Below are positions 31,284 through 46,744 of a stretch of DNA of 64,000 bases, in pieces. The notes below the pieces were generated by a model, which was not told the origin of the DNA, did no database searches, and saw nothing but the letters and a program-made list of their open reading frames with translations. The DNA lies in the IMG/VR virus record IMGVR_UViG_3300023174_000042, positions 124,001 to 188,000 of that record; one strand, 5' to 3'. Each line of letters starts with the position of its first letter. Position 1 is the stretch's first letter. The translations under genes were made by a program, and so were the position numbers.

Positions 31284-32498
31284 ATGAAAGAAAAAATTAG
31301 AGTATTGTGTCTCCCCTCAGATAGGTCAGGAGTCGGAAAGTTCAGATCAGTCGACCCCCACATTAAATTACAAAACTTATATTCGGAAGATTTTCATGTT
31401 GACATTGATTACGAACCAAAAATTAACGACATAAATTATTGGAAAAAATATCAAATAGTTCATTTTCACCGAAGTTTTGGCCAACTTGAACAATGTCCAA
31501 ATGTAATAAATAGTTTGAAAAGTTTGGGAATTATTATGATTGCCGACATAGATGACTATTGGTTACCAACAAAAGAACACCCTATTCATCAATTAATTGT
31601 TGAAAATAAAATGCACCAAAAAATTGTGGATAATTTAAAGGCGGCAAGTTATGTTACAACAACCACAGAATTGTTTGCTGAAGAAATTAGAAAATTTAAT
31701 AAAAATGTAATTGTTTTACCAAATGCGATCGACCCTAGCGAACCACAATTTAACCAACCAACACCACCATCAAATAAAATCAGAGTCGGATGGTTGGGAG
31801 GATCGTCACATTTACACGACTTGAAATTGTTGGATGGCATGGTTTCAAAACTTGGATCTGTCCAAGACAAATTACAATATTATGTTTGTGGATTTGACAT
31901 TCGTGGAAGTGTTACAGAAATCAACAAAGAAACTGGAGAACAAAAACAAAGACCAATTAAACCTGAAGAAACGGTGTGGGTTAGATATGAAGAAATATTT
32001 ACAAACAACTACAAAATAATTTCACCTGAATACAAAACATTTTTAAACAAATTCAAAGAAGAGGAATATCCTGCAATTCAGAACGAAAATTATGTTAGAG
32101 TTTGGACAAGACCTGTTGATCAATACGCAAGAAATTATTCAAATTTTGATATTTCTTTGGCACCAATCAAAAACCACATTTTTAACAGAATGAAATCACA
32201 ATTAAAAGTTATTGAAGCAGGATTTTATAAAAAGGCGTTAATTGCGTCAAATGTTGGTCCATATACAATTGATTTAAAACATGCGTTAGATAAAGGTCAA
32301 TTTACGAATGGAAATGCTTTGTTGGTAAATGAAAATAATAATCATAGTGATTGGGCTAAAAACATCAAAAAATTGGTTGACAATCCAAATATGATTACCG
32401 ATCTTGGTGAGAGACTTTATGAAACGGTGAAAGACAGATATGATCTTAATAAGGTTACGGCCGATCGCGCATCTTTTTACAAATCTTTAATTAAATAA
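31284..32498 (+). CDS. GT-B (GT4-like) glycosyltransferase
   Basis: DIDDYW, LPNAID, VGWLGGSSH, DISLAP...FNRMKSQLKVIEAG, IASNVGPY. Confidence 0.85.
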   Translation: MKEKIRVLCLPSDRSGVGKFRSVDPHIKLQNLYSEDFHVDIDYEPKINDINYWKKYQIVHFHRSFGQLEQCPNVINSLKSLGIIMIADIDDYWLPTKEHPIHQLIVENKMHQKIVDNLKAASYVTTTTELFAEEIRKFNKNVIVLPNAIDPSEPQFNQPTPPSNKIRVGWLGGSSHLHDLKLLDGMVSKLGSVQDKLQYYVCGFDIRGSVTEINKETGEQKQRPIKPEETVWVRYEEIFTNNYKIISPEYKTFLNKFKEEEYPAIQNENYVRVWTRPVDQYARNYSNFDISLAPIKNHIFNRMKSQLKVIEAGFYKKALIASNVGPYTIDLKHALDKGQFTNGNALLVNENNNHSDWAKNIKKLVDNPNMITDLGERLYETVKDRYDLNKVTADRASFYKSLIK

Positions 32499-32501
32499 TT
32501 T

Positions 32502-33233
32502 ATGATCAATATACCAATAACAAAAATTTTATTTTTAGATATTGAAACCGTTGGGGGTTGTAAAGACTATCAAAGTTGTATTGATTCTAATCCAGTGGTT
32601 GCCGAACAATTTGAAAAGTATTTTGATTGGTTTTTAAAAAGATTTCCCGAAGATAAAGAATTTGGTGAAGAGGGAGATAGAACAATAAAAGAACATATGG
32701 ATATTGTTTTTAAAAAAAGAGCGGCACTTGTTCCTGAGTTTGCTAAAATCGTGTGTGTTTCTATGGCGTTTGTTTTGGACAACGGTGATGTTAAAAGACA
32801 AACATTTTCTGGCGATGATGAAAAACAACTTTTAATTGACGTAAGAAACTTATTGGATCGTTGTCACAAATTAGATTTTTATCTATGTGGTCATAATTTA
32901 AAGAACTTTGACATCCCGATGTTGGCAAAACGAATGATTATTAATGACATTATGCCATCTAAACTTCTTCCTTCATATGATACAAAACCTTGGGAGATAA
33001 AAGCAATTGATACAAAAGAAATTTGGCAATATGGAGCATATACCTCAATTGGATCTTTGGATTTGATGTGTGCTTGTTTAGAGATACCAACACCAAAAGA
33101 TGGTGAGGTAAATGGGGGTATGGTTCATGAAGCGTATTGGAGTTATAATAAACTTACTGAAATATCAAAATATTGTGAAAAAGATGTTGATGTATTGATT
33201 CAATCAATAAAAAAATTAAAAAATTTAAAATGA
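32502..33233 (+). CDS. Stand-alone PolB-type 3'-5' exonuclease
   Basis: FLDIETV, GHNLKNFDIP and YCEKDV (DEDDy). Confidence 0.85.
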   Translation: MINIPITKILFLDIETVGGCKDYQSCIDSNPVVAEQFEKYFDWFLKRFPEDKEFGEEGDRTIKEHMDIVFKKRAALVPEFAKIVCVSMAFVLDNGDVKRQTFSGDDEKQLLIDVRNLLDRCHKLDFYLCGHNLKNFDIPMLAKRMIINDIMPSKLLPSYDTKPWEIKAIDTKEIWQYGAYTSIGSLDLMCACLEIPTPKDGEVNGGMVHEAYWSYNKLTEISKYCEKDVDVLIQSIKKLKNLK

Positions 33234-33832
33234 CAGAGGAAACTGATGATAATGTAAATGAAAAAGACTTGGAAGATCTATTAAAAATCTTGGAAGATGT
33301 TTCAAATGAAGAAATTGACTACAATGTCATTATGGATTCATTAGGATTGGACATAAAAGAATTGGAGCAGGATTTAAAAGATTATGTTCAACAGATTGAT
33401 TTATCTTATAAAAAAACAAATGAGGACGCAAAAACCCCTTCTTATGTATATCAATCAGACTCTGGTTTTGATTTATGTTCCACAGAAGAAATTTGGATTC
33501 ATGGTTTTGATCGAAAATTAATATCAACAGGATTACACTTTGATATTCCTGAAGGTTATGAAATTCAAATTAGGTCAAAAAGTGGATTGGCTTTAAAACA
33601 AGGTTTGATGGTGTTAAACTCGCCTGGCACGGTAGATCAAGGATATTTGGGAGAAATAAAAGTAATTTTATTTAATACAACAAAAGAAAAAGTTAAAATA
33701 GAAAAAGGTCAAAAAATTGCTCAAGCGGTTCTTTGCCCAGTAGTTTCAGGAAAATGGGTTAATTTAGTTGAAAAAGATAATTTAGAATCCAAAGACAGAA
33801 ATGATAATGGATTTGGATCAACAGGAATATGA
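33230..33832 (+). CDS. dut: Trimeric dUTPase with an acidic N-terminal extension
   Basis: SGFDL, RSKSGLA, NSPGTVDQGYLGEI, IAQAV, R..NGFGSTG. Confidence 0.95.
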   Translation: MTEETDDNVNEKDLEDLLKILEDVSNEEIDYNVIMDSLGLDIKELEQDLKDYVQQIDLSYKKTNEDAKTPSYVYQSDSGFDLCSTEEIWIHGFDRKLISTGLHFDIPEGYEIQIRSKSGLALKQGLMVLNSPGTVDQGYLGEIKVILFNTTKEKVKIEKGQKIAQAVLCPVVSGKWVNLVEKDNLESKDRNDNGFGSTGI

Positions 33833-34551
33833 AAGTCGCATTAGTTTGTATTTCAAAAAACGAAGACCATTATATTGAAGAATGGGTTTCATATTATAAA
33901 AAATTAGGATTTACAAATGTTTTTATCTATGAAAACAATTGGAGATGTAGTTTATTTGATAATGATAGTTTTGTTGTAAAAATACCTTTTGATGGTGACG
34001 CTCAACAGAATAACTCTTATAACAATTTTATAAACAATCATGGAAAGAACTATGATTGGGCCGCTTTTTTTGATGTAGATGAATTTTTAGTTTTGAAAAA
34101 ACACAATAATATATCTGATTTTTTGAAAAATTACAACGACTACTCTAGTGTGGCAATAAATTGGGTGTTTTTTGGAGATGGGGGAAATAAGTTTGTTGAA
34201 AACAATTATAATGTATTAAAAAGATTTACCAAAAGACAAATTGGGGTAGACCAACACATTAAAACAATTTGTAAATTATCATCAAACCCTGTATTTAATT
34301 CACCTCATTATGCTAGTAATTTAAATTGGGTTGACCCAACTTATCATGTGGGATCAGGACCATTTAACACCAACAAAAACGATGAAACTGCCCAATTAAA
34401 TCATTACTTTACAAAAACATTTGAAGAGTTTAAACTTAAAGTAAATAGAAGAAGAGCTGATAACAATTCTATAAGAAATTTAAGTGATTTTGATCCGCAC
34501 AATAGAAATGAAATTGAAGATTTATCGGCGTTAAATTTTTTTATAAGTTAA
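33829..34551 (+). CDS. GT-A glycosyltransferase (GT92/GT2-like)
   Basis: KNEDHYIEEWVSYY, FFDVDEF, INWVFFG, LNHYFTKT. Confidence 0.8.
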   Translation: MKVALVCISKNEDHYIEEWVSYYKKLGFTNVFIYENNWRCSLFDNDSFVVKIPFDGDAQQNNSYNNFINNHGKNYDWAAFFDVDEFLVLKKHNNISDFLKNYNDYSSVAINWVFFGDGGNKFVENNYNVLKRFTKRQIGVDQHIKTICKLSSNPVFNSPHYASNLNWVDPTYHVGSGPFNTNKNDETAQLNHYFTKTFEEFKLKVNRRRADNNSIRNLSDFDPHNRNEIEDLSALNFFIS

Positions 34552-34554
34552 AAA

Positions 34555-36048
34555 ATGATCACAATAATATACTCAACACATAAAAATCAAGAATATAATA
34601 ACAAATTTAAAAAACATTTGTTAGATACTGTTGGTGTAAAAGACGTTCAAGTATTAGAATATGTTAATCACAATCAATACTCACTAGCTCAAGTGTATAA
34701 TAGTGGTATTACAGAATCAATTTACGATATTATTGTTTGTTGTCATAACGATATAAAATTAGAAAAAAATTGGGGAAAAAAACTTATAGAAGATTTTTCA
34801 AATAACAACGAGTTTGGTGTAATTGGAAAGGCAGGTTCTTGTTACTTTCCTAAATCAGGTGTATATTGGGAAAAGATGCATCAAACAATGGTTGGTCAAG
34901 TTTATCACCATCCTGAAGGTCAAAAAAAATGGATTAATAGATATTCGGTTAAACTACCATATTTAATTCCTGTTGTTACAATTGATGGATTATTCATCTC
35001 TTTTGATAAAACAAAAATTAAACACCACTTTGATGAAACAATTGGTAAGTTCCACTTTTACGATCATGGATTCTGTTTACCAAATTATTTAGATAGTGTT
35101 AAAATTGGCGTGACCTCTTCATTTGAAATTACACATGAGTCTGTCGGTCAACCAAATCAAGAATTTTGGGAAAGTAAGGAAAAATTTGTTGGGAAGTGGG
35201 GAGATAAATTACCATTAGATTTAAAACCATCAAAAGTTTATGTTCCTATAATTAAGGAAAAACCATTAAAAAATATTGGCAAAGTTGCGGTTATAATTCC
35301 AACAAAAGGTAAAGTTGATATGTTATATAATTGTGTAAAGTCATTATATGATAACTGTAATTCAAATTTGTTTGATGTGTTTATTGCCGATACAGGATCA
35401 ACAGATGATGAAAAAAATCAAATTAAATCTCAAATTTTATCGTTAGGTAATGTTAATTTAATTGAATACGATTATTACAATTTTGCCAAGATTAATAACG
35501 ATGTTGTTAAAAATCATATAAATGATGATTATGAATTTTTATTATTCTGTAATAATGACATTAAGATATTAAATAATGTGATTTATGGGATGTTAAAAAT
35601 CTTTAAAGAAAAATCTAAAGTTGGAACGGTGGGTGTAAGATTACATTATGAAGATAATACAATTCAACATGACGGAATTATATTTAAATTAGGGGATAAC
35701 AAAAACCTAATAGTAACACATGCAAATGTAGGGTCTTATTATTTGTTTACAAATGGAATCAAAAGTGTTTACGGAAACACTGCGGCTTTAATGATGATAA
35801 GAAAATCAGTATTCAAAAACGTAGGAAACTTCAATGAAAATTACACGACATGTTTTGAAGATGTTGAGTTAAACCTTTCTTGTGTGATTTCAGGTTTTAC
35901 AAATTACTACGACGGTAGTTTAGTTTCATATCACTTTGAAAGTCAAACTAGAGGTAAAAATAGTGAGTCAATTAAAAAAGAATCATATGATTTTGATAAT
36001 ACTTTATTACCATTCATAAAAGAAAATTATAACAAAATATTTAAATAA
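34555..36048 (+). CDS. Two-domain GT-A/GT2 glycosyltransferase
   Basis: CCHNDI, IDGLFI and FHFYD in the first domain; VIIPTK, DTGSTD, FCNNDI, FEDVEL and HFES in the second. Confidence 0.85.
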   Translation: MITIIYSTHKNQEYNNKFKKHLLDTVGVKDVQVLEYVNHNQYSLAQVYNSGITESIYDIIVCCHNDIKLEKNWGKKLIEDFSNNNEFGVIGKAGSCYFPKSGVYWEKMHQTMVGQVYHHPEGQKKWINRYSVKLPYLIPVVTIDGLFISFDKTKIKHHFDETIGKFHFYDHGFCLPNYLDSVKIGVTSSFEITHESVGQPNQEFWESKEKFVGKWGDKLPLDLKPSKVYVPIIKEKPLKNIGKVAVIIPTKGKVDMLYNCVKSLYDNCNSNLFDVFIADTGSTDDEKNQIKSQILSLGNVNLIEYDYYNFAKINNDVVKNHINDDYEFLLFCNNDIKILNNVIYGMLKIFKEKSKVGTVGVRLHYEDNTIQHDGIIFKLGDNKNLIVTHANVGSYYLFTNGIKSVYGNTAALMMIRKSVFKNVGNFNENYTTCFEDVELNLSCVISGFTNYYDGSLVSYHFESQTRGKNSESIKKESYDFDNTLLPFIKENYNKIFK

Positions 36049-36054
36049 ATAATA

Positions 36055-36927
36055 ATGAAAGTATTAATAGGTTGTCTATTATTTAGAGAATACACAGGTT
36101 CAGAAATGTATGTTTTTGAACTAGCAAAAAACTTAATTGATTTAGGATGTGAAGTTACGGTAACATCACCAAATATTGGAGGTCCATTAACGGATTTGGC
36201 AAGAAGTTTTGGAATCAAAACCCATAATTTATCATCAACATTCCAAAATAAAAATTACGATATTATTCACTCACAACATTATCCAGTTACCGAAACACTA
36301 TTAAAAATTTTTCCAAACAAAAAAATGATATGTTCAATCCATTCTGAGATATATCAATTAGAAAATCCTATTTTACATCCTAACATAAAAAAATATATCG
36401 CAATTAGACCTCAAATTAAAAATCATTTAGTAAATAATTTTTGGATTCCAGAAGAAAAAATTACAGTCATTTATAACCCAATTGACATTGAGAAATACAA
36501 CACATTAAACACAAGAGATGATGGTTATACTTTATTTGTTGGGACAATAGACTATACAAGACAAAATACAATTTTTGATTTAGTTGACTATACAAGAAAT
36601 GATAATAGAGAACTATGGTTAGTTGGTAAAAATCACGGAAAATATTTACCACTTATTTTAACAAACTCACATGTTAAATATTTTGATTCCACTTACGATG
36701 TGGATTATTTTGTTAAAAATTGTAAAGAAACTGCAGGAATTTTATTAGGAAGAACTACAATTGAAGGTTGGTTAACTGGTAAACCTGGATGGATCTACGA
36801 TGTAGATGGAAATGGGAATATTAAAAGTAAAGAATTACATCAAGTGCCCGAAGATTTAGATAGGTTTAACTCTAAATTAGTTGTTAAACAAATAAAAGAA
36901 GAGTATTATAAAATTTTAACACAATGA
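36055..36927 (+). CDS. GT4-like glycosyltransferase
   Basis: TGSEMYVFELAK, VIYNPID, GRTTIEG. Confidence 0.8.
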   Translation: MKVLIGCLLFREYTGSEMYVFELAKNLIDLGCEVTVTSPNIGGPLTDLARSFGIKTHNLSSTFQNKNYDIIHSQHYPVTETLLKIFPNKKMICSIHSEIYQLENPILHPNIKKYIAIRPQIKNHLVNNFWIPEEKITVIYNPIDIEKYNTLNTRDDGYTLFVGTIDYTRQNTIFDLVDYTRNDNRELWLVGKNHGKYLPLILTNSHVKYFDSTYDVDYFVKNCKETAGILLGRTTIEGWLTGKPGWIYDVDGNGNIKSKELHQVPEDLDRFNSKLVVKQIKEEYYKILTQ

Positions 36928-39452: not shown

Positions 39453-39453
39453 T

Positions 39454-40221: not shown

Positions 40222-40748
40222 TTAAAGTTGTTGGTGACGATGTAATTATTGATGACGATGTTGTCGTAAAACAAAATTTAGAAATTATTGGGTCTCACGT
40301 TTCTATTGATAAAGGAGTTTATTGTTCCACAAATGTCACAATAGGATCTTACGTACATATAAGTCCATATGTTACTATTATCGGAGGTAAAAACGGTCAT
40401 TTTATTGCGAATGGATTTAATAATATAATGGCTGGATCAAGAATAATTTGTGGTTCAGATAGATTCGATGAAAGTGGTTTATTTGGGGCAATGATACCAA
40501 AAGAATTAAAAGGCACTCAAATAGTTGAACCTGTTATCATGGAAGAATTCTCAAATGTAGGAACTAATTCCATTGTGTTACCCGGATCAACACTTAGACG
40601 TGGAGTTTTGTTAACTGCCGGTAGTTTACTTATGGGCGATACTGAAGAATGGGGTGTCTATAAAGGAAATCCAGCAATATTAATTAAAAAAATTAATCCA
40701 ACAAAAATTATTGAAAACGCTAAATTATTAGGATATAATGAAGACTAA
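40218..40748 (+). CDS. Hexapeptide-repeat (LbH) acyltransferase
   Basis: IGSHVSID, IGSYVHIS, VGTNSIVLPG, GNPA. Confidence 0.85.
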   Translation: MIKVVGDDVIIDDDVVVKQNLEIIGSHVSIDKGVYCSTNVTIGSYVHISPYVTIIGGKNGHFIANGFNNIMAGSRIICGSDRFDESGLFGAMIPKELKGTQIVEPVIMEEFSNVGTNSIVLPGSTLRRGVLLTAGSLLMGDTEEWGVYKGNPAILIKKINPTKIIENAKLLGYNED

Positions 40749-41535
40749 AATTAATATGATTGGTGGAGGTTTCCAACATAGTATATCAACAAACGATTTA
40801 CCCCCAAAATTTATTGAGTGGGTTAAAGACGGATCTGCTTCAATATCAATACATATTGATAATGGTTTACACTTACCATTTAATGATCAAACTAAAAATT
40901 ATGGGTGGTTATGTGAATCAAAAACAATAATACCACATTTATATGAATGGGCTAAAAATAATATTGAATTATTAAAGAATAAATTCATAAAAGTTTTTAC
41001 ACATGATGTAGAGTTATCCAAGTCATCAGATATTTTTCAACTTACCCAATGTAGTGCCAAATCTTATTTATCTCACGGTGAAATATATCCAAAAACTAAA
41101 TTGGTTTCTATGATTGCATCAAACAAAACCATGTGTTCGGAACACATTTATAGACAACGAATGATTCATAAATTTTCTAAAGACTGTGATCATTTTGGTA
41201 GAGGTTATAACCCAATAAACAATAAAGAAGATGGGTTAAAAGATTATTGTTTTTCATTTGCAATGGAGAATGCAACATATTCAAATATGTTTACGGAAAA
41301 AATTACAGATTGTTTTATGACAGGAACAATACCGATTTATTATGGGATTAGTAATATTGGGAATTACTTCAATACGGATGGAATAATAATATTAGATGAT
41401 AACTTCAAAATTGAAGATTTATCATTTGAACTGTATCATAGTAAAATTGATGCGGTAATAGATAACTTAAAAAGATCAATTGACTTTCCTCATGCGGAGG
41501 ACTACATTTTTAAAACCTTCATTGAAGATAAATAA
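40738..41535 (+). CDS. GT10 alpha-1,3-fucosyltransferase-like
   Basis: SMIASNK, YCFSFAMEN, FTEKITDCF..GTIPIYYG. Confidence 0.85.
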   Translation: MKTKINMIGGGFQHSISTNDLPPKFIEWVKDGSASISIHIDNGLHLPFNDQTKNYGWLCESKTIIPHLYEWAKNNIELLKNKFIKVFTHDVELSKSSDIFQLTQCSAKSYLSHGEIYPKTKLVSMIASNKTMCSEHIYRQRMIHKFSKDCDHFGRGYNPINNKEDGLKDYCFSFAMENATYSNMFTEKITDCFMTGTIPIYYGISNIGNYFNTDGIIILDDNFKIEDLSFELYHSKIDAVIDNLKRSIDFPHAEDYIFKTFIEDK

Positions 41536-41547
41536 AAACATTTTACT

Positions 41548-42147
41548 ATGTCATTTGAAATTATAACTACATTTGAAAATAAAATTTCTAATTTTTTTGG
41601 GTCTCCGTACGCAATTGCGGTTGATAGTTGCACGCACGGTATTGAGTTGTGTTTAAGGTATACTAAAGAAAAAAAAATAAATGTCCCAAAAAGAACATAT
41701 CTGTCCATACCATTTTTAGCAGAAAAAATGGGATTAGAACGAGAATGGAGAGATGAGGAATGGGAAGATTATTACACCCTTAATTATGATAAAAAAAGAA
41801 TAATTGATGCTGCGGTTCTATGGAAAAAAGATAGTTATATTCCAAACACGTTTATGTGTCTTAGTTTCCAATACCAAAAACATTTGTCTTTAGGAAGAGG
41901 TGGTATGATTTTACTTGATGACAAAAATGATTATATTAATTTAAAAAAAATGTCGTATGATGGTAGATTACCAAACATTCCTTGGAGGGATCAAGATATA
42001 GATTGTATTGGTTATCATTACTATATGACACCCGAAACTGCTCAATTAGGGTTAGACAAATTAGAAAAGGCAATCAACACACCACCAAGAAAATGGGTAT
42101 ATAATGATTGGCCAGATTTAACGCAGATGTCAATTTTTAAAAAATAA
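41548..42147 (+). CDS. Miniature DegT/DnrJ-family PLP aminotransferase
   Basis: AIAVDSCTHGI, IIDAA, SFQYQKHL (PLP lysine), GRGGMI, GYHYYM; only 199 aa. Confidence 0.75.
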   Translation: MSFEIITTFENKISNFFGSPYAIAVDSCTHGIELCLRYTKEKKINVPKRTYLSIPFLAEKMGLEREWRDEEWEDYYTLNYDKKRIIDAAVLWKKDSYIPNTFMCLSFQYQKHLSLGRGGMILLDDKNDYINLKKMSYDGRLPNIPWRDQDIDCIGYHYYMTPETAQLGLDKLEKAINTPPRKWVYNDWPDLTQMSIFKK

Positions 42148-42164
42148 AAAATAAAAATAAATCA

Positions 42165-43139
42165 ATGAAAAAAGCATTTATTACAGGTATAAATGGCCAA
42201 GATGGGTCATATTTATCAGAATATCTTTTAGGGTTAGGATATGAAGTTCATGGGATAATTAGAAGAAATTCAGTTTCTGAAAACCAACAAAGTAGATTTA
42301 CTGATGAAATTAGAAATAAATTACACATTTATTATGGAGATCTTTTAGATCAAGGTAGTTTAGAAAGATTGTTAACCGACATTCAGCCAGATGAAATCTA
42401 CAATTTAGCGGCTCAAAGCCACGTTAGAATAAGTTACGACATCCCTCAATTTACAGTTCAGACTAACGCAATAGGTGTTATTAATATTTTAGAAGCATAT
42501 AGAAGAGCTTGTCCGAACTCAAGATTTTATCAAGCGAGTTCATCAGAAATGTTTGGAAGTTCGGTTGACAACGATGGATTTCAAAGAGAGACTACGACAA
42601 TGAATCCAGTATCGCCTTACGGATGCTCAAAGGTATTTGGTTATAATATTGTTAGAAACTACAGAAATGCATATAAATTACACGCATCTAATGGTATTTT
42701 ATTTAATCACGAATCACCAAGAAGAGGTTCTAATTTTGTTACAAATAAAGTAGTTAAAACTGCGGTAGAAATTAAATTAGGATTAACAAATCAATTAGTT
42801 TTGGGTAATATGGACTCTTATAGAGATTGGGGACATTCAAAAGATTATGTTAGGGCAATGCACTTAATAATAAATAACGACACTCCTGATGATTTTGTTG
42901 TATCAACAATGATTACTCACTCAGTTAGAGATATGGTAGAGTACGTTTTTAATAAATTAGAATTAGATTATTCAAAATATGTAAGCCAAGACCATAAGTT
43001 TACTAGACCAGAAGAACTTGATTATTTAAAAGGGGATTCAACAAAAATTAGAACCCAATTGGGGTGGAAACCTGAATATACTTTTGAAATGATGTTAGAT
43101 GAGATGATAGAATATTGGCTAAATTATTTTAAAAAATAA
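42165..43139 (+). CDS. gmd: GDP-mannose 4,6-dehydratase
   Basis: ITGINGQDGSYL, NLAAQSHV, YQASSSEMFG, SPYGCSK, LFNHESPRRG, RDWGH. Confidence 0.95.
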   Translation: MKKAFITGINGQDGSYLSEYLLGLGYEVHGIIRRNSVSENQQSRFTDEIRNKLHIYYGDLLDQGSLERLLTDIQPDEIYNLAAQSHVRISYDIPQFTVQTNAIGVINILEAYRRACPNSRFYQASSSEMFGSSVDNDGFQRETTTMNPVSPYGCSKVFGYNIVRNYRNAYKLHASNGILFNHESPRRGSNFVTNKVVKTAVEIKLGLTNQLVLGNMDSYRDWGHSKDYVRAMHLIINNDTPDDFVVSTMITHSVRDMVEYVFNKLELDYSKYVSQDHKFTRPEELDYLKGDSTKIRTQLGWKPEYTFEMMLDEMIEYWLNYFKK

Positions 43140-43237
43140 ATAATAAAAAAAAATAATAGGTGTAACTTTTTTAACATGAATTTTTGGACAAAAAAATTTT
43201 ATAATCAAGAATCATCAAAAAGATTCGTTAAATAACT

Positions 43238-43975
43238 ATGACAAGAAAAAAACCAACTCCTTTAGTTGAGGAACAAACAAACAAACCATTATCAAAAAAA
43301 GATTTTATTAATTCAGTAATAAAAAGAAAAAGTAAGAGTAAATTTTTAACTGAAAATCAAAAAGATTACTATGATATATTAATGTCAAAACAAATAACTA
43401 TATGTTCAGGCCCTGCTGGCGTTGGTAAATCATACATCGCAATGAAAGCGGCCGTGGATTTACTTATGGATTCTAATAATGGTTATGAAAAAATAATTAT
43501 TGTAAGACCAGCGGTGGAAGCCGAAGAAAAATTAGGTAGTCTTCCTGGTAATTTAGAAGAAAAATTAGACCCTTACATTTTTCCTTCGTATTATCTTTTA
43601 AATAAAATAATTGGAAAAGAATCAAGAGAAAAACTAAAAGACGCAGAAATTATTGAAGTTTTTGCTTTAGCATACATGAGAGGAATGAATATTGATAATT
43701 CAATTTTAATCTTTGAGGAGGCACAAAACGCAACTCCAAACCAAATGAAATTGCTATTGACAAGAATTGGGTTTAATAGTAAATTCTTCATATCTGGCGA
43801 TTTAGAACAAACAGACAGATATAAAGACAAAAAACAATCGGGTCTTTATGATGCGTTGCAAAGATTTAGTGGTGTTGATGATATTGGAGTTTACGATTTT
43901 AGAAACGCCAAAAACGTTAGAAACCCTTTGATTTCAAAAATATTAGAAAAATACGATGATGAGAATAGGAATTGA
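43238..43975 (+). CDS. phoH: PhoH-family ATPase
   Basis: GPAGVGKS, RPAVE, LGSLPG, YMRG, EEAQN, GDLEQTD, VRNPL. Confidence 0.95.
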   Translation: MTRKKPTPLVEEQTNKPLSKKDFINSVIKRKSKSKFLTENQKDYYDILMSKQITICSGPAGVGKSYIAMKAAVDLLMDSNNGYEKIIIVRPAVEAEEKLGSLPGNLEEKLDPYIFPSYYLLNKIIGKESREKLKDAEIIEVFALAYMRGMNIDNSILIFEEAQNATPNQMKLLLTRIGFNSKFFISGDLEQTDRYKDKKQSGLYDALQRFSGVDDIGVYDFRNAKNVRNPLISKILEKYDDENRN

Positions 43976-44621
43976 TATTAATGGAGTGTTAAGAGACACG
44001 ATTGGAAAATTTCAACAATTATATGAAAAACATTTAATTGATAAAGAAGAGGATCAATTTTTGGGACAGACATATGAATTGGATTTGTCAGGAAACACTG
44101 AATTAATCGAATCCTCAACAGATGTTTTTGAATACAAAAAAATATCTGAAGTAAATAGCCTTGATTTATTCAGTCATTTTGCCTTTCAGAGCAAAGAAGA
44201 ACTTTTTAATTTTATGTATGAAGAATATGCTATGGAGTTATTTGGACACGCTCCTTCAACAGAAATGACAACATTTAATATTTTAAATGATTTATATCAC
44301 GAATTAAGAGACGAAAATGAATTGTTAATTGTATCGAGCGAAATAGGAAAATCAAAACCATCATCACTTTTCTTTTTATCCAAATTTGGATGTTTGTTAG
44401 AAAAAATAGTTTTTTTTGGTGAAATTACTAAAAATAACATGTGGAATCAAGTTGATATTTTACTTACGTCAGATCCTAACTTATTATTAGAAAAACAAGT
44501 AGGAAAAATTGTTGTTAAATATAACACAATCTACAATAAACACATTCAAACAGATTTAGAAATTAATTATCTTTCTGAATTTGCTGAAATTATTAAAAAC
44601 ATAAAACAAAATGCTATTTAG
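43956..44621 (+). CDS. HAD-superfamily 5'-nucleotidase-like protein with degenerate motif I
   Basis: IGIDINGVLRD, versus the canonical DxDGVL. Confidence 0.55.
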   Translation: MMRIGIDINGVLRDTIGKFQQLYEKHLIDKEEDQFLGQTYELDLSGNTELIESSTDVFEYKKISEVNSLDLFSHFAFQSKEELFNFMYEEYAMELFGHAPSTEMTTFNILNDLYHELRDENELLIVSSEIGKSKPSSLFFLSKFGCLLEKIVFFGEITKNNMWNQVDILLTSDPNLLLEKQVGKIVVKYNTIYNKHIQTDLEINYLSEFAEIIKNIKQNAI

Positions 44622-44868
44622 TCTATTTGGTGAAAACTACTATATTGATTTAGATAAATTAGAAAAAGAAGTTGAGTTTTTGAACACAACGGGAGAAAGT
44701 CAATTTCATTTGATAAAATATGAAATGGTAAAAATGATGGTCGAAACAATTCTTACAGAATCAGAACCCGTTGATGAAAAATTGGGACCAAATAATAGTG
44801 AATTAACAATACCATTCAAAATTTCTTTTAACACTTTACGAGTTAAAAACATAATAAATAAACTATAA
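44611..44868 (+). CDS. Hypothetical protein
   Basis: 85-aa ORF within the operon. Confidence 0.6.
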   Translation: MLFSLFGENYYIDLDKLEKEVEFLNTTGESQFHLIKYEMVKMMVETILTESEPVDEKLGPNNSELTIPFKISFNTLRVKNIINKL

Positions 44869-44876
44869 TTAAAAAC

Positions 44877-45935
44877 ATGAACAACGATCAATTTGAAAAA
44901 TTAGAAAGATCCATAAATAACATGAAAGAAAAACTTTCAAGGATTTATTTTATGGTACAAGACACAAAAGGAAACGTAAAAGCATCTGTTAGATACATTT
45001 ATCAGATGGCAATGACACTGAAAAAGAATGGTTACAATGCCATTATATTACATGAAAAACCTGATTATTTTGGTGTTTCTTCTTGGATGGGAGAAGAATA
45101 CATGACAGAACTTGTTCACAGGTCTATTGAAGGCACAAGTTTAGAAATTTCCCCTGATGATTTGATTATCATTCCTGAAATTTATGGGTTTGTAATGGAT
45201 CAGATTACAAAATTACCTTGTGGAAAAATTGTATTAAGTCAGGCTTTTGATCACATCTTTGAAACATTACAACCAGGTCAATCTTGGAGTCAATTAGGAT
45301 TTTATAAGTGTATTACAACATCAAGTAAACAAAAAGAATTAATTGAATCTGTTATGAGAAATGTGTCAATAGACATTGTTGAACCATGTGTTTCTGAAAA
45401 CTTTAAAAGAAACGAATTTCCACCAAAAACAATTATAAATATTCACACAAGAGACGCAAGGGACACGGCAAATTTGATTAAAACTTTTTATATTAAATTT
45501 CCACAATATAGATGGATTACTTTTAGAGATCTGAGAGGTCTAAGTGAAATTGAATTTGCTGACGCTATGAAAGATAGTTTCATTTCTGTTTGGATTGATC
45601 AAACAAGTTCTTTTGGAACATTTCCACTTGAATCTATGAAAATGGGTATTCCAGTATTAGGTTTGGTTCCTGATATCATGCCTTCTTGGATGAATGAAGA
45701 TAATGGTCTTTGGGTTAATAACAAAACAATTATTGTAGATGTCCTTTCTGATTTTATACAAAATTGGTTAGAAGACAATTTGAATCCTTCTTTATTTGAA
45801 CAAATGCAAAAAACTATTGAAACAATTAGCACGATTGAAAAATTTGAAAATGATACATTAAACTTATTTTCAGAAATTTTTCAAAAACGTATAACTTCTT
45901 TTGAAGATCAACTTTCTAAATTTGAAACAATTTAA
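44877..45935 (+). CDS. GT-B-like glycosyltransferase
   Basis: DDLIIIPE and SSFGTFPLESMKMGIPV (GT4-type C-terminal motif). Confidence 0.65.
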   Translation: MNNDQFEKLERSINNMKEKLSRIYFMVQDTKGNVKASVRYIYQMAMTLKKNGYNAIILHEKPDYFGVSSWMGEEYMTELVHRSIEGTSLEISPDDLIIIPEIYGFVMDQITKLPCGKIVLSQAFDHIFETLQPGQSWSQLGFYKCITTSSKQKELIESVMRNVSIDIVEPCVSENFKRNEFPPKTIINIHTRDARDTANLIKTFYIKFPQYRWITFRDLRGLSEIEFADAMKDSFISVWIDQTSSFGTFPLESMKMGIPVLGLVPDIMPSWMNEDNGLWVNNKTIIVDVLSDFIQNWLEDNLNPSLFEQMQKTIETISTIEKFENDTLNLFSEIFQKRITSFEDQLSKFETI

Positions 45936-45937
45936 TT

Positions 45938-46744
45938 ATGAGCAAGAAAAACACAATATCTATTATTTTACCGATTAAATCGGCAAAAGCGATCGGTTTC
46001 GAAGACTTTTTTGATAAATGTATCCAATCAGTCAAAAACCAAAAAGAACATGTAAACGAATTAATCATTGTACATGGAGATGAAGATCTTTTAAAAAATC
46101 ATTTAACATCGTATAATTTTGAAGAGTTAAACGTTGTTTTTAAAACTTGGTCAGAGCAGCCAAATTTTGCTAAACAAGTAAATTATGGTGTTGAAGTTGC
46201 GACTTCTAATTGGTGTTCTATTTTAGAATTTGATGACGAGTATTCAAACATTTGGTTTAAAAACGCATTGAATTATATGGATATTTACAAAGATGTTCAC
46301 GCATTTTTACCTATAGTTGTTGACGTAGATGAGAAATTAGTTTTTGCTGGATTTACAAATGAAGCAACATTTGCCGCAAACATATCATCTGAAATTGGCA
46401 TTTTAACAAACGAAACTTTACAAACATTCCAAAATTTTCAAACATCTGGAATGGTTTTTCAAAAAGAAAAATATCAAGAAGTTGGTGGAATGAAATCAAA
46501 TTTAAAATTGACTTTTGGTTATGAATTGTTTTTACGTCTGACACATAATTCGGCAAAAATTATGACAATTCCTAGAATCGGATATAAACATATGAATTTG
46601 AGAGAAGGATCAATTTTTTGGAATTACAAAAATGGTGAAAACAAAATGAATCAAGATGAAGCAAGATTTTGGATTGAGACCGCGAAAAAAGAATACCTTT
46701 TTACCACTGAAAGAGAAATAAATTATGAACCTCAAGAAATTTGA
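45938..46744 (+). CDS. GT2-like glycosyltransferase
   Basis: ISIILPI, CIQSVKNQ, VNYGV, LEFDDEY, EVGG. Confidence 0.75.
   Translation: MSKKNTISIILPIKSAKAIGFEDFFDKCIQSVKNQKEHVNELIIVHGDEDLLKNHLTSYNFEELNVVFKTWSEQPNFAKQVNYGVEVATSNWCSILEFDDEYSNIWFKNALNYMDIYKDVHAFLPIVVDVDEKLVFAGFTNEATFAANISSEIGILTNETLQTFQNFQTSGMVFQKEKYQEVGGMKSNLKLTFGYELFLRLTHNSAKIMTIPRIGYKHMNLREGSIFWNYKNGENKMNQDEARFWIETAKKEYLFTTEREINYEPQEI

What the first reader, a model, noticed from the sequence alone, without database searches (positions are those of the whole stretch)
31284..46744. 15-kb glycan-building operon with three different fucosyltransferase-type families
Seen: about ten GT genes (GT4-like x3, GT2/GT92-like x4, GT10, GT11, NodZ-like), plus Gmd, DegT-like, LbH acyltransferase, FkbM and a cupin, all co-directional. 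No flippase, polymerase, initiating phospho-GT or GDP-fucose synthase is visible in the window. Known: Gmd + aminotransferase + acetyltransferase is the GDP-N-acetylperosamine route, and GT10/11/23 use GDP-sugars. Inference: soluble elongation and capping of protein-linked virion glycans rather than O-antigen conversion. DNA hypermodification is an alternative.
Basis: partly seen in the sequence, partly recalled or inferred. Interest (0 to 1): 0.65.

Follow-up and report, generated by a model that had tools for sequence, protein, structure and literature searches.

The report
Swappable glycan gene island, lake phage
A 272-kb freshwater T4-like phage carries a fast-changing block of about ten soluble sugar-transferring enzymes plus a small pathway for an amino-deoxy sugar; islands like this are already known in aquatic phages, and what this one decorates (most likely the phage's own fibres, less likely the host surface, very unlikely DNA) is still untested.

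Summary
Window 31284-46744 encodes ten co-directional putative glycosyltransferases: three GT-B/GT4-like, four GT2-type, one GT10, one GT11 and one GT23/NodZ-like. It also encodes Gmd, a DegT-type enzyme, an LbH acyltransferase, an FkbM methyltransferase and a cupin. The stretch is not uniform. A hypervariable island (33829-43139) lies between backbone genes (exonuclease, dUTPase, PhoH) and three backbone GTs. Close relatives that are 92-93% identical in DNA swap whole GT cassettes, while Gmd, a conserved 199-aa "mini-DegT" and the cupin persist. The whole 272-kb genome lacks an initiating phospho-GT, Wzx, Wzy, a multi-pass membrane protein and a GDP-fucose synthase; some relatives do carry Fcl. 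DNA glycosylation is disfavoured: the only thymidylate-synthase homologue has the canonical residues, and there is no C5-methyltransferase or TET. Virion-protein glycosylation gains modest support. A (Gly-Thr-Ser)n collagen-like tail fibre is flanked by a GT1-GT9 fusion and a DUF2827 GT, and one backbone GT is homologous to the AmGGT/ApAgt family, whose member ApAgt extends glucose on adhesins. Host-surface remodelling is not excluded. Comparable islands are published for cyanomyophages and pelagimyophages, so this is a new member of a known kind with an unresolved target.

The parts
31209..31233 (+). Intrinsic-terminator-like hairpin (10-bp stem plus T-run) that closes the upstream unit. The co-directional GT block starts 50 nt downstream.
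   Evidence: sequence seen
31284..32498 (+). Backbone GT-B glycosyltransferase (404 aa), conserved in relatives L003, L013 and G001.
   Evidence: phrog_7162 glycosyltransferase, E 4e-48. Glyco_trans_1_4 at 24 bits is below the cut-off of 27. Relatives are 65-88% identical.
32502..33233 (+). PolB-exo-like 3'-5' exonuclease. A backbone gene, not a glycan gene.
   Evidence: PF10108, E 5.8e-11
33230..33832 (+). dUTPase. A backbone gene that marks the left edge of the variable island.
   Evidence: PF00692, 88.7 bits; synteny
33829..34551 (+). GT2_4/GT92-like glycosyltransferase. A variable slot: no homologue in the 80 Gmd loci, and replaced in G001.
34555..36048 (+). Glycosyltransferase with two GT-A domains (Glyco_tranf_2_5 + Glycos_transf_2), 497 aa.
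36055..36927 (+). GT4-type (GT-B) glycosyltransferase, 290 aa.
   Evidence: PF13439, 62.3 bits
36924..37655 (+). GT2 glycosyltransferase.
   Evidence: PF00535, 63 bits
37630..38421 (+). GT11 (alpha-1,2-fucosyltransferase family) glycosyltransferase.
   Evidence: PF01531, 86.4 bits against a cut-off of 23.9
38426..38845 (+). Conserved cupin (139 aa) of the sugar cassette. Candidate keto-isomerase or epimerase, or a WbuC-like protein.
   Evidence: TIGR04366 WbuC, 39.9 bits against a cut-off of 42. Invariant H52/H54/E68/H107. Found in 64 of 80 Gmd loci at about 80% identity. One viral Atlas neighbour is auto-named QdtA cupin.
38838..39452 (+). FkbM-family methyltransferase (probable sugar O-methylation).
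   Evidence: TIGR01444, 51.3 bits; PF05050
39415..40221 (+). GT23-like (FUT8/NodZ-type) glycosyltransferase, 268 aa.
   Evidence: Profile against PDB: FUT8 at E 5.9e-5, NodZ at 3e-3, POFUT2 at 0.017, aligned over GVHVR-x-TD. AlphaFold model pLDDT 78.8; Foldseek top hits are FUT8, NodZ and POFUT1/2. Absent from a lake variant and replaced in G003 and G001.
40218..40748 (+). Left-handed beta-helix (hexapeptide) acyltransferase, a probable sugar N-acetyltransferase.
   Evidence: PF00132. The NeuD/PglB/VioB subfamily is the best hit at 42.7 bits, below its cut-off.
40738..41535 (+). GT10 (alpha-1,3/4-fucosyltransferase family) glycosyltransferase.
   Evidence: PF00852, 35.7 bits against a cut-off of 23.9
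41548..42147 (+). 'Mini-DegT': a 199-aa PLP sugar-aminotransferase core. It lacks the C-terminal domain and about 45 residues of the large domain.
   Evidence: Matches PF01041 profile positions 19-75 and 165-237 only. Invariant K111 (SFQxxKHLSLGRGG) and D87. 38 of 63 viral homologues are 194-201 aa. Model pLDDT 92.7; best matches are GDP-perosamine synthase 3dr7/3dr4/3bn1.
42165..43139 (+). GDP-mannose 4,6-dehydratase (Gmd), the right-hand anchor of the variable island.
   Evidence: PF16363, 382 bits. TIGR01472 at 383.8 bits is just under its cut-off of 415. It is the only SDR in the genome.
43238..43975 (+). PhoH-like ATPase, the first gene of the conserved right-hand backbone.
   Evidence: PF02562, 214 bits; synteny in at least 13 relatives
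43956..44868 (+). Two conserved backbone ORFs of unknown function (221 aa and 85 aa).
   Evidence: No family hit; syntenic in relatives
44877..45935 (+). Backbone GT-B glycosyltransferase (352 aa), homologous to AmGGT of the AmGGT/ApAgt alpha-1,6-glucosyltransferase family.
   Evidence: Profile against PDB 8xsg: E 6.7e-19 over residues 43-336. No hit to T4 AGT or BGT. The role of ApAgt comes from PMC12159676. Syntenic in 15 loci.
45938..46744 (+). Backbone GT2 glycosyltransferase.
   Evidence: PF00535, 35.3 bits; syntenic in 15 loci at 45-61% identity
14065..16275 (+). Outside the finding: a 736-aa fusion of GT1 and GT9-like domains. Across 13 DUF2827 loci it occurs only where the collagen-like fibre occurs.
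16252..18681 (-). Outside the finding: an 809-aa collagen-like tail fibre and candidate glycan acceptor. It has 145 G-x-y triplets (x mostly Thr, y mostly Ser), is 36.5% Ser+Thr and has 16 N-x-S/T sequons.
19245..20525 (+). Outside the finding: a DUF2827 protein, a putative cytoplasmic glycosyltransferase from a family found next to trimeric adhesin genes.
   Evidence: PF10933, 324 bits; bioRxiv 10.64898/2026.01.22.700529; conserved next to fibre-region genes in 13 loci

Best explanation
This is a hypervariable glycan-building island in the morphogenesis region of a freshwater T4-like jumbo phage.

Shown:
- A conserved three-gene sugar cassette (cupin, 199-aa mini-DegT, Gmd), together with an LbH acyltransferase and an FkbM methyltransferase.
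- A set of soluble GT-A and GT-B transferases around that cassette, including GT10, GT11 and GT23-like enzymes. This set is exchanged cassette by cassette between close relatives.
- Three further GTs in the conserved backbone on either side.

Inferred pathway: host GDP-mannose is dehydrated by Gmd to GDP-4-keto-6-deoxymannose. The cupin may isomerise or epimerise that intermediate. The mini-DegT transaminates it and the LbH enzyme N-acetylates it. The product is a GDP-linked acetamido-6-deoxyhexose, either GDP-N-acetylperosamine or a 3-amino isomer.

Inferred assembly: the soluble GTs use this donor and host nucleotide sugars to build a methylated oligosaccharide capped by fucosyltransferase-type enzymes. 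This happens in the infected cell's cytoplasm, without a lipid carrier, flippase or polymerase.

Inferred acceptor (my committed guess): a phage structural protein. The leading candidate is the (Gly-Thr-Ser)n collagen-like tail fibre, whose gene is flanked by a GT1-GT9 fusion and a DUF2827 GT. The resulting virion glycan coat would vary between strains.

Separate confidences:
- Island anatomy and cassette swapping: about 0.9.
- A GDP-amino-6-deoxyhexose pathway: about 0.7.
- Acceptor is a virion protein: about 0.45.
For: Gene families.

Conserved core against variable GTs in 80 viral loci: Gmd in 80, cupin in 64, mini-DegT in 60, GT10 in 32, LbH in 21, GT11 in 17. The backbone and island layout recurs in at least 13 relatives.

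Cassette replacement:
- G003 is 92-93.5% identical in DNA on both sides but has 6.7 kb where this phage has 1.3 kb. G001 replaces three other slots.
- A lake contig joins the cupin directly to LbH.

Mini-DegT: it keeps the Schiff-base Lys and the PLP Asp, folds confidently, and best matches GDP-perosamine synthase.

No lipid-linked machinery and no membrane proteins in the whole genome.

DNA route disfavoured.

Leads towards protein glycosylation:
- The fibre is 36.5% Ser+Thr.
- The GT1-GT9 fusion is present in 5 of 5 loci that have the collagen-like fibre, and in none where the fibre is replaced.
- The DUF2827 family is associated with adhesin genes.
- unk352 is homologous to AmGGT, whose family member ApAgt extends glucose on adhesins in the cytoplasm.

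Position: the island lies between the tail-fibre genes (16-28 kb) and the head genes (55-64 kb).
Against: - No glycan has been observed, and nothing here measures an acceptor.
- O-antigen and capsule GTs are usually soluble too. Host Wzx/Wzy or ABC exporters could serve phage-built units, so the missing machinery does not discriminate.
- The cupin, mini-DegT and Gmd triad also lies on contigs labelled Prochlorococcus, Flavobacteriales, Chitinophagaceae and Marinimicrobia. That suggests an origin in cellular surface-polysaccharide loci.
- Gmd is absent from G011, which has the collagen-like fibre and enough contig to hold the island.
- No recognisable initiating protein-GT of the NGT/GT41 type is present.
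- AmGGT itself does not accept glycopeptides.
- Expression timing could not be determined, and no RNA run holds the locus.
- The cupin's function and the donor used by the three fucosyltransferase-type GTs are unknown. The genome has no GDP-fucose synthase.
Confidence: 0.45

Rival explanations
1. Host-surface remodelling. The phage GTs and the sugar cassette plug into the host's own O-antigen, capsule or S-layer glycan pathway. The host supplies the initiating transferase, the lipid carrier and the exporter. The infected cell's surface changes, which blocks superinfection or stops progeny from sticking to debris.
For: - This is the published reading for equivalent islands in pelagimyophages and cyanomyophages (PMC7029224; PMC12801897).
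- The sugar cassette occurs on bacterial-labelled contigs.
- Cassette-level hypervariability is what O-antigen-like loci show.
- Soluble GTs are normal in such pathways (general knowledge).
Against: - The phage encodes none of the membrane steps. It would depend entirely on host exporters, which are usually selective for their own glycan (general knowledge).
- 17 putative GT genes is a large investment for a lytic phage.
- Three of the GTs are backbone genes conserved across relatives. Others sit beside a fibre gene and belong to families tied to protein glycosylation.
Confidence: 0.35
2. DNA hypermodification. The GTs build glycans on a modified base in phage DNA to evade restriction, as in T4, RB69, DLP3 and the C5-MT/5mYOX phages.
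For: - Multi-GT DNA glycosylation exists in T4-like phages (PMC13326640; bioRxiv 10.1101/2023.12.21.572611).
- dUTPase and an exonuclease lie inside the interval.
- A thymidylate-synthase homologue lies about 8 kb from the genome's second GT cluster.
- In T4 the a-gt gene sits next to gene 55 (from memory).
Against: - The single TS homologue is a ThyA equivalog (295.7 bits against a cut-off of 108). It has canonical L143, D169 and N177, the positions that the 5hoC paper uses to tell apart hydroxymethyl-, 5-hydroxy- and dCMP-specific enzymes.
- No C5-cytosine methyltransferase, Tet/JBP or 2OG-FeII_Oxy_3 is present.
- The unk352 profile does not hit T4 AGT or BGT.
- GDP-sugar and fucosyltransferase-type enzymes do not feature in either DNA-glycosylation paper. 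'GDP' occurs 0 times in the Pyle et al. text.
Confidence: 0.04
3. A mixed or other target. Different GT sets serve different acceptors: for example, the backbone and fibre-adjacent GTs act on virion proteins while the variable island acts on the host envelope. Alternatively, the product is a soluble or secreted glycoconjugate.
For: - The GTs fall into at least three separately located groups with different conservation: 14-20 kb, 31-47 kb, and genome 258-262.7 kb next to a lysozyme.
- Gmd presence is uncoupled from the fibre.
Against: - Nothing positive points to a soluble product.
- The tight co-directional packing without strong internal terminators suggests joint expression of the backbone and island GTs.
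Confidence: 0.15

Closest known systems
Cell-wall/LPS-type gene sets of large cyanomyoviruses (Synechococcus phage S-SCSM2R, S-SCSM1, Prochlorococcus phage P-SSM2)
   Same: - T4-like aquatic myoviruses with many soluble GTs (13 in S-SCSM2R, including GT10 and two GT11) plus NDP-sugar epimerases.
- S-SCSM2R carries a 195-aa homologue of the mini-DegT (52% identity) inside a GT cluster.
- The target has not been tested there either.
   Different: - This phage comes from freshwater and, by capsid protein, is closer to huge uncultured phages, Microcystis phage Mel-JY01 and Flavobacterium phage immuto (41-44% identity).
- It has 17 putative GT genes, a GT23-like enzyme and the cupin/mini-DegT/Gmd/LbH module, and no second SDR.
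Hypervariable 'host recognition cluster' of pelagimyophages and cyanomyophages (PMC7029224)
   Same: A non-syntenic island inside the structural region of T4-like aquatic phages that holds tail-fibre genes together with many GTs and sugar-nucleotide genes.
   Different: - Those authors found GT8 to be the most represented family and argue for host O-chain modification.
- Here the families are GT2, GT4, GT10, GT11 and GT23-like.
- Here the cassette swap is resolved at 92-93% DNA identity.
GDP-perosamine / GDP-N-acetylperosamine pathway (Gmd, Per, PerB) of Caulobacter, E. coli O157 and Vibrio cholerae O1 (pathway from general knowledge; structures 3bn1, 3dr4, 3dr7)
   Same: - Gmd followed by a DegT-family aminotransferase and a hexapeptide acetyltransferase.
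- GDP-perosamine synthase is the best structural match of the mini-DegT.
   Different: - The aminotransferase is about half the normal length, with no C-terminal domain.
- A strictly co-conserved cupin is present that the perosamine route does not need. This suggests a 3,4-keto-isomerase or epimerase step, and therefore possibly a 3-amino sugar (mycosamine-like; from memory).
- The LbH enzyme is only a generic family match.
Virus-encoded protein glycosylation: mycobacteriophage capsid and tail-tube glycans (Freeman et al. 2023, as summarised in PMC12619734). Chlorovirus PBCV-1 and Mimivirus fibril glycosylation clusters are cited from memory.
   Same: - Virus-encoded soluble GTs act in the cytoplasm on virion proteins.
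- From memory, the giant viruses also encode a dehydratase, a DegT aminotransferase and an LbH acetyltransferase beside their GTs, and have collagen-like proteins.
   Different: - No glycan has been demonstrated for this phage lineage.
- Mycobacteriophages carry far fewer GT genes (two are reported for phage Maravista).
- The giant-virus systems belong to eukaryotic viruses.
Cytoplasmic adhesin glycosylation in bacteria: ApNGT/ApAgt of Actinobacillus (PMC12159676) and DUF2827 proteins beside trimeric autotransporter genes (bioRxiv 10.64898/2026.01.22.700529)
   Same: - unk352 is homologous to AmGGT of the AmGGT/ApAgt family (E 6.7e-19).
- A 324-bit DUF2827 protein sits beside a trimeric fibre gene and is tandem-duplicated in two relatives, as it is next to adhesin genes.
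   Different: - No NGT/GT41 initiating enzyme is present.
- AmGGT does not accept glycopeptides.
- The DUF2827 function is itself only predicted.
Flavobacterium phage vB_FspM_immuto glycan cluster (MW353176)
   Same: - A cultured relative by capsid protein.
- One co-directional cluster holds several GTs, a full-length and a short (214-aa) DegT, a PglB-like acetyltransferase, a methyltransferase and a WcaG-type epimerase.
   Different: - Its short DegT is only 29% identical.
- It has no Gmd, GT10 or GT11 annotated in that stretch, and it does have an SDR epimerase.

Membership tests
GT10 (Pfam PF00852, alpha-1,3/4-fucosyltransferase family) | Match to the family HMM above the curated gathering score | tested here: met
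   ORF 40738-41535 scores 35.7 bits against a cut-off of 23.9, over residues 118-229
GT10 / GT11 / GT23 as fucosyltransferases | Use of GDP-L-fucose as donor | not testable with these tools
   The genome has no GDP-fucose synthase; Gmd is the only SDR. Relatives L009, L058 and L078 do carry an Fcl-like gene next to Gmd. Here the donor could be host GDP-fucose or another GDP-6-deoxyhexose.
GT11 (Pfam PF01531) | Match to the family HMM above the curated gathering score | tested here: met
   ORF 37630-38421 scores 86.4 bits against a cut-off of 23.9
GT23 (FUT8 / NodZ) | Match to a curated family model (Pfam NodZ / FUT8 catalytic domain) | tested here: not met
   ORF 39415-40221 has no Pfam, NCBIfam or PHROG hit at E <= 0.01
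GT23 (FUT8 / NodZ) | Fucosyltransferase-type GT-B fold with the conserved Arg-containing motif I (HxRxxD) and motifs II and III | tested here: met
   The family profile aligns GVHVR-L-TD with FUT8 GVHVR-R-TD at E 5.9e-5, and hits NodZ at 3e-3. R142, H150 and D183 are invariant. Foldseek top hits are FUT8, NodZ, POFUT1/2 and plant FUT1. I file it as GT23-like, not as a member.
GDP-mannose 4,6-dehydratase (TIGR01472 equivalog) | Score above the equivalog cut-off | tested here: inconclusive
   383.8 bits against a cut-off of 415. Pfam GDP_Man_Dehyd gives 382 bits against a cut-off of 27, full length. This is by far the best-scoring family.
DegT/DnrJ/EryC1 sugar aminotransferases | Full two-domain fold-type-I architecture (about 360 aa) | tested here: not met
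   The protein is 199 aa and matches profile positions 19-75 and 165-237 only. No other DegT fragment exists in the genome. The short form is the norm in the viral family.
DegT/DnrJ/EryC1 sugar aminotransferases | Catalytic Schiff-base lysine and PLP-N1 aspartate | tested here: met
   K111 and D87 are invariant in 29 sequences. K111 lies in the stretch that aligns with the PLP-lysine region of PDB 4zwv. The model has pLDDT 92.7, TM 0.66-0.70 on the query and best matches GDP-perosamine synthase.
GDP-perosamine N-acetyltransferase PerB / NeuD-PglB-VioB acetyltransferases | Score above the subfamily cut-off | tested here: not met
   TIGR03570 scores 42.7 bits against a cut-off of 160.8. Only the generic hexapeptide repeat passes.
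Wzx/Wzy- or ABC-dependent O-antigen / capsule gene cluster | Initiating phosphoglycosyltransferase (Bac_transf or WecA/MraY type) | tested here: not met
   No hit in the whole 272-kb record, and the control genomes ring
Wzx/Wzy- or ABC-dependent O-antigen / capsule gene cluster | Flippase, polymerase or ABC-2 permease (multi-pass membrane proteins) | tested here: not met
   No Polysacc_synt or Wzy_C hit. No protein has more than 3 hydrophobic segments apart from a 1852-aa protein with 5. The two proteins with 3 segments have no relevant family. ABC2_membrane itself was not searched.
Phage DNA glycosylation systems | An enzyme that makes the acceptor base: a TS homologue with N177D (+L143D/E or D169N), or C5-MT + 5mYOX/TET | tested here: not met
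   The single TS homologue has L143, D169 and N177 (criteria from PMC13326640). No PF00145, PF12851 or PF13640 hit. The Tet_JBP control was silent.
Hypervariable GT-rich island of aquatic T4-like myoviruses | Non-syntenic GT/sugar gene block between conserved modules, near tail-fibre genes, in a phage with a gp23-type capsid | tested here: met
   Gp23 capsid protein, 248 bits. Synteny breaks between dUTPase and PhoH. Cassette swaps occur at 92-93% DNA identity. Fibre genes lie 13-15 kb upstream.
Virion protein glycosylation system | Glycan covalently attached to a structural protein | not testable with these tools
   Only circumstantial leads exist: GT genes flank a Ser/Thr-rich fibre, and two GT families are tied to adhesin glycosylation.

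The most novel reading that the evidence does not exclude
A bacteriophage carries a self-contained cytoplasmic protein-glycosylation system comparable to those of chloroviruses and mimiviruses. Fibre-adjacent GTs (the GT1-GT9 fusion and DUF2827) start O-glycans on a (Gly-Thr-Ser)n collagen-like tail fibre. The swappable island extends and caps these glycans with acetamido-6-deoxyhexose, methylated sugars and fucose-type residues. The amino sugar is supplied by a previously uncharacterised minimal (199-aa) PLP aminotransferase working with a dedicated cupin. Strain-to-strain cassette exchange would then diversify the virion's glycan coat, and with it adsorption or resistance to host defences.
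Probability: 0.3. Interest if true: 0.8.

Novelty: new member of a known kind. Interest (0 to 1): 0.5.

Why it matters
Aquatic T4-like phages commonly carry large, fast-evolving sets of glycosyltransferases, and nobody has shown what these enzymes glycosylate.

This genome is a compact and unusually rich case:
- It has 17 putative GT genes.
- It has three fucosyltransferase-type families but no GDP-fucose synthase.
- Its three-gene sugar cassette is shared with bacterial-labelled contigs.

It also gives concrete handles for a test:
- a defined candidate acceptor, the Ser/Thr-rich collagen-like fibre flanked by GTs;
- cultured phages that carry comparable sugar/GT clusters with a short DegT;
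- a minimal DegT variant whose activity can be assayed.

If the virion is the target, phage glycan coats would join receptor-binding proteins as a variable determinant of phage-host interaction in lakes and oceans. If the host surface is the target, this would be a very large investment by a lytic phage in superinfection exclusion.

Tried and rejected
- Megablast of the island against 50,697 phage records found nothing. tblastn of unk352 against the same records also found nothing.
- Expression timing could not be determined. TATAAATA lies upstream of only 17 of 327 genes and not upstream of the island. The most enriched upstream 8-mers (TATTTATA/ATATTTAT, TAnnTTTG-like) do not separate gene classes. 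Sigma-70-like hits are at chance level.
- The cupin profile against PDB gave only spurious beta-propeller hits. Its role as keto-isomerase, epimerase or WbuC-like protein stays open.
- Single-sequence PDB searches of unk268 and DUF2827 found nothing. unk268 only resolved with a profile.
- The test of whether Gmd tracks the collagen-like fibre was inconclusive. Gmd is in G001 and G003 (fibre present) but not in G011 (fibre present). The complete genome G005 lacks both, and the other contigs are too short to judge.
- No RNA run holds the locus, so expression is unknown. The laid runs are contigs only.
- The Tet_JBP negative is weak because the control genomes lack that family.
- I considered and rejected the idea that the 199-aa DegT is a pseudogene fragment. 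It is full-length-conserved at 66-81% identity among the 29 aligned sequences, has invariant catalytic residues, and folds at pLDDT 92.7.
- I considered that the unk352 gene's position might mirror T4 a-gt next to gene 55. The profile does not hit T4 AGT or BGT.
- Not run: complex prediction, because enzyme-substrate contacts with a repetitive fibre are a poor use of it; the search for homologous proteins and the search of protein representatives, because family scans and loci answered the questions and the operators asked for thrift.
- One paper search failed on a formatting rule, and one DOI was not held.
- No alternative genetic code was used.

Full report
**Source and context.** The window is bases 124001-188000 of a 272,576-bp linear IMG/VR virus record that CheckV rates about 93% complete. 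The genome is 30.2% G+C. The interval 31284-46744 is 28.4% and its variable core 27.8%. The major capsid protein is gp23-type (Pfam Gp23, 248 bits). Its nearest database relatives, at 41-44% identity, are an uncultured huge phage, Microcystis phage Mel-JY01 and the Flavobacterium 'immuto' phages. The window also holds a portal, a prohead protease, a family-B DNA polymerase and tail-fibre genes. Near-identical DNA of the island occurs in lake and freshwater metagenomes from several independent studies. In one of these the contigs match with zero differences. This is therefore a real, recurrent freshwater T4-like jumbo phage.

**Check of the observation.** ORF calling shows 20 tightly packed or overlapping + strand ORFs between 31284 and 46744.
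- GT-B/GT4-like enzymes: 31284, 36055 and 44877.
- GT2-type enzymes: 33829, 34555 (two domains), 36924 and 45938.
- GT11 at 37630, GT10 at 40738, FkbM at 38838, a hexapeptide acyltransferase at 40218, and Gmd at 42165 (382 bits).
- A DegT-family ORF at 41548.
- A cupin at 38426 (WbuC family, 39.9 bits against a cut-off of 42).

The 'NodZ-like' gene is ORF 39415-40221. It has no curated-family hit. A profile built from nine viral homologues hits FUT8 (E 5.9e-5), NodZ (3e-3) and POFUT2 (0.017) across the GVHVR-x-TD motif. Its AlphaFold model (pLDDT 78.8) has FUT8, NodZ, POFUT1/2 and plant FUT1 as best Foldseek matches.

ORF 44877-45935 had no family hit on its own. A 15-sequence profile matches PDB 8xsg at E 6.7e-19 over almost its full length. 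So ten GT genes and three fucosyltransferase-type families are present.

The interval also contains an exonuclease, a dUTPase, PhoH and two unknown ORFs. And the DegT-like protein is only 199 aa.

**Anatomy from comparison.** I used Gmd as an anchor and fetched 80 viral loci; at least 599 exist. I then searched all the window's proteins against them.
- Gmd is in 80 of 80.
- The cupin is in 64, at about 80% identity.
- The DegT-like protein is in 60, covered full-length at 70-81% identity in the best hits.
- GT10 is in 32, LbH in 21, GT11 in 17.
- Each other GT is in only 0-14 loci.

Gene-order maps of the 13 closest loci show a conserved right-hand backbone: PhoH, unk221, unk85, unk352 (GT-B), GT2c, unk248, and onwards. 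The left-hand backbone is the GT-B gene at 31284, the exonuclease and dUTPase. Everything between dUTPase and PhoH is variable apart from the sugar core.

Two very close relatives make the process visible.
- G003 is 93.5% identical in DNA over window 36683-39452 and 92% over 40746-45212. Between FkbM and GT10 it carries about 6.7 kb of other genes, including two distant GT23-like paralogues, where this phage has 1.3 kb.
- G001 (83-85% identical) replaces the GT2/GT92 slot, the GT4+GT2 pair and the GT23-like gene.
- A contig from another lake joins the cupin directly to LbH and so lacks FkbM and the GT23-like gene.

All three fucosyltransferase-type families occur together in only 3 of the 80 loci. 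One strong terminator precedes 31284. None of similar quality lies inside the block, and promoter-like hits are at chance level. Joint transcription is therefore plausible but not shown.

**The sugar module.** The 199-aa 'mini-DegT' matches only profile positions 19-75 and 165-237 of the 360-position DegT model, and no other DegT fragment exists in the genome. It is not a remnant, for these reasons:
- 38 of 63 viral homologues are 194-201 aa, and only three have the canonical length.
- 29 aligned sequences are 66-81% identical to this one, with an invariant lysine (K111 in SFQxxKHLSLGRGG) and aspartate (D87). K111 lies in the stretch that aligns with the PLP-lysine region of solved aminotransferases.
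- The AlphaFold model is confident (pLDDT 92.7). Its best structural matches are GDP-perosamine synthase chains (E about 1e-9, TM 0.66-0.70 on the query), ahead of ArnB, PglE and others.

Short homologues occur in Synechococcus phage S-SCSM2R (52% identity), the Flavobacterium immuto phages (29%) and two huge uncultured phages, each time inside GT clusters. Among 185,579 species-representative genomes only 15 loci carry the signature. These are on MAG or single-cell contigs labelled Prochlorococcus (four), Flavobacteriales, Chitinophagaceae, Marinimicrobia and others. In 10 of the 15 the cupin, mini-DegT and Gmd lie in that same order, and none shows any other backbone gene of this phage. The triad is therefore a mobile cassette shared by aquatic bacteria and phages.

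The cupin keeps an H-x-H...E...H pattern and has only viral Atlas neighbours, one auto-named 'QdtA 3,4-ketoisomerase cupin'. PDB gave nothing useful.

My inference, from the established chemistry of 6-deoxy-amino sugar pathways (general knowledge), runs as follows:
1. Gmd makes GDP-4-keto-6-deoxymannose.
2. The mini-DegT aminates it, either at C4 (perosamine) or, if the cupin is a 3,4-keto-isomerase, at C3.
3. The LbH enzyme acetylates the amine.
4. FkbM methylates a sugar hydroxyl.

The genome has no second SDR and hence no GDP-fucose synthase. Relatives L009, L058 and L078 have an Fcl-like gene directly after Gmd, and L041 and L061 have PseB-like genes. The donor used by the GT10, GT11 and GT23-like enzymes here is therefore open: host GDP-fucose or another GDP-6-deoxyhexose.

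**What is absent, genome-wide.** Six-frame family searches of the whole record found no Bac_transf, no WecA/MraY-type transferase, no Wzx (Polysacc_synt), no Wzy_C and no nucleotidyltransferase above cut-off. The control genomes rang in each case. A hydropathy scan of 327 ORFs found no hydrophobic segment in any island GT. The exonuclease has one. Apart from a 1852-aa protein with five segments, no protein has more than three. The two three-segment proteins have no relevant family. The genome does hold more GTs:
- A second cluster at genome 258.0-262.7 kb, next to a lysozyme, has four GT2-type genes (one just under the Pfam cut-off) and a GT9-like gene.
- A 736-aa GT1-GT9 fusion lies at window 14065-16275.
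- A DUF2827 protein lies at window 19245-20525.

That makes about 17 putative GT genes. For comparison, the 13 in S-SCSM2R were described by its authors as possibly the highest number in a marine phage.

**The DNA alternative.** Known routes to glycosylated phage DNA need one of two things. The first is a thymidylate-synthase homologue that makes 5-hydroxymethyl- or 5-hydroxy-dCMP, diagnosed by N177D with L143D/E or D169N (PMC13326640). The second is a C5-cytosine methyltransferase with a 5mYOX/TET dioxygenase (bioRxiv 10.1101/2023.12.21.572611). The genome has one TS homologue. It scores as a ThyA equivalog (295.7 bits against a cut-off of 108), and its active-site strings V-L-P-P-C-H and R-S-T-D-V-G-L-G-L-S-F-N keep L143, C146, D169 and N177. 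There is no C5-methyltransferase, Tet/JBP or 2OG-FeII_Oxy_3 hit, though the Tet control was silent. The unk352 profile does not hit T4 AGT or BGT. I put this rival at about 0.04.

**Acceptor: virion protein or host surface.** Sequence alone cannot settle this.

For host-surface remodelling:
- It is the published interpretation of comparable islands.
- The cassette has bacterial-labelled kin.
- O-antigen GTs are normally soluble, so the missing membrane steps could be borrowed from the host.

For virion proteins:
- The island lies inside the morphogenesis region.
- Three GTs are conserved backbone genes.
- unk352 is homologous to AmGGT of the AmGGT/ApAgt family, whose member ApAgt extends glucose on autotransporter adhesins in the cytoplasm. 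AmGGT itself does not take glycopeptides.
- An 809-aa collagen-like fibre lies 13 kb upstream. It has 145 G-x-y triplets, with x mostly Thr and y mostly Ser, and is 36.5% Ser+Thr.
- That fibre is flanked by the GT1-GT9 fusion on one side and, past a DnaJ-like gene, by a DUF2827 protein on the other. DUF2827 is a family of predicted cytoplasmic GTs that sit beside trimeric adhesin genes, often in tandem copies.
- In 13 viral DUF2827 loci, the GT1-GT9 fusion occurs in exactly the five that have a collagen-like fibre, and in none where other large genes replace it. DUF2827 is tandem-duplicated in two loci. These loci are close kin, so the counts are not independent.

Against a simple link:
- Gmd is missing from G011, which has the fibre and enough contig to hold the island.
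- No GT41/NGT-type initiating enzyme is present.

I commit to virion-protein glycosylation as the most likely target at about 0.45. Host-surface remodelling stands at about 0.35 and a mixed or other target at about 0.15.

**Novelty and verdict.** GT-rich hypervariable islands in aquatic T4-like phages are documented, so the feature is a new member of a known kind.

Features specific to this case:
- GT10, GT11 and a GT23-like enzyme occur together without an Fcl.
- The cupin, mini-DegT and Gmd cassette is strictly conserved, and its half-size aminotransferase appears in annotations but, as far as my searches went, has not been studied.
- The cassette swap is resolved at 92-93% DNA identity.
- Adhesin-type GT families flank a Ser/Thr-rich collagen-like fibre.

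Its interpretation is a reasonable hypothesis that gains some circumstantial support but is not established.

**Items that rest on my memory rather than a tool:**
- the Mimivirus and PBCV-1 glycosylation clusters;
- BclA-type glycosylated collagen-like proteins;
- mycosamine biosynthesis;
- T4 a-gt lying next to gene 55;
- the reading of unk248 as gp55-like and of the 516-aa ORF at 50023 as gp5-like;
- TAnnTTTG as the Bacteroidota -7 box.

Noticed in passing
window 14065-20525: A conserved block: GT1-GT9 fusion (+), collagen-like (G-T-S)n tail fibre (-), DnaJ-like (+), DUF2827 (+). Across 13 viral loci the GT1-GT9 fusion occurs only together with the collagen-like fibre. DUF2827 is tandem-duplicated in L100 and L101.
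   Followed up: yes
genome 258,000-262,700 (L086:5088-9676), outside the window: A second glycosyltransferase cluster next to a phage lysozyme: four GT2-type genes (one just under the Pfam cut-off) plus a GT9-like gene. It lies about 8 kb from the genome's only thymidylate synthase. The target is unknown.
   Followed up: partly
L103-L115 (contigs labelled Prochlorococcus, Flavobacteriales, Chitinophagaceae, Marinimicrobia): In 10 of the 15 loci the cupin, mini-DegT and Gmd triad recurs in the same order on cellular-labelled MAG or SAG contigs, with no other backbone gene of this phage. I did not resolve whether these are true host loci, other phages or infected cells.
   Followed up: partly
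window 38841-40341 (run X8); L117:2770-9447 (G003): Natural cassette variants. One lake contig lacks FkbM and the GT23-like gene, with 119 other letters at the joint. G003 carries a different 6.7-kb gene set at the same junction, inside DNA that is otherwise 92-93% identical.
   Followed up: yes
window 56236-58143 (-): The major capsid protein is 635 aa. The best Gp23 Pfam stretch covers residues 381-620, and tblastn hits to relatives cover only 52-62% of it in one or two pieces. It therefore carries a large extra N-terminal or inserted region of unknown function.
   Followed up: no
whole genome, upstream regions: The 8-mers TATTTATA and ATATTTAT occur in 34 and 31 of 121 upstream gaps, about 13-14 times more often than expected. 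TAnnTTTG-like words are also enriched. These may be phage promoters and a Bacteroidota-type -7 box, which would hint at the host phylum.
   Followed up: partly
window 46741-47487 and 50023-51573: By eye, unk248 looks like a gp55-type late sigma factor and the 516-aa ORF starts with a gp5/VgrG-like hub motif. No HMM supports either reading.
   Followed up: no
window 53955-54467 (+) and 55445-56167 (-): Two endonuclease VII/HNH-like genes lie close to the capsid gene. They may be homing endonucleases.
   Followed up: no
L086:1806-3113 (genome about 254.8-256.1 kb): A phage-encoded UvrC-like protein with a GIY-YIG domain and a UvrC RNase H endonuclease domain (153 bits).
   Followed up: no
genome 270903-271934 (-): The thymidylate synthase is 343 aa. 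NCBIfam matches it in two or three stretches that leave a gap at about residues 199-232, where the translation shows extra sequence. The active-site residues are canonical.
   Followed up: partly
L009, L058, L078; L041, L061: Related islands carry an Fcl-like GDP-fucose synthase, or PseB-like dehydratases, directly next to Gmd. The sugar repertoire therefore differs between relatives as well as the GT set.
   Followed up: partly
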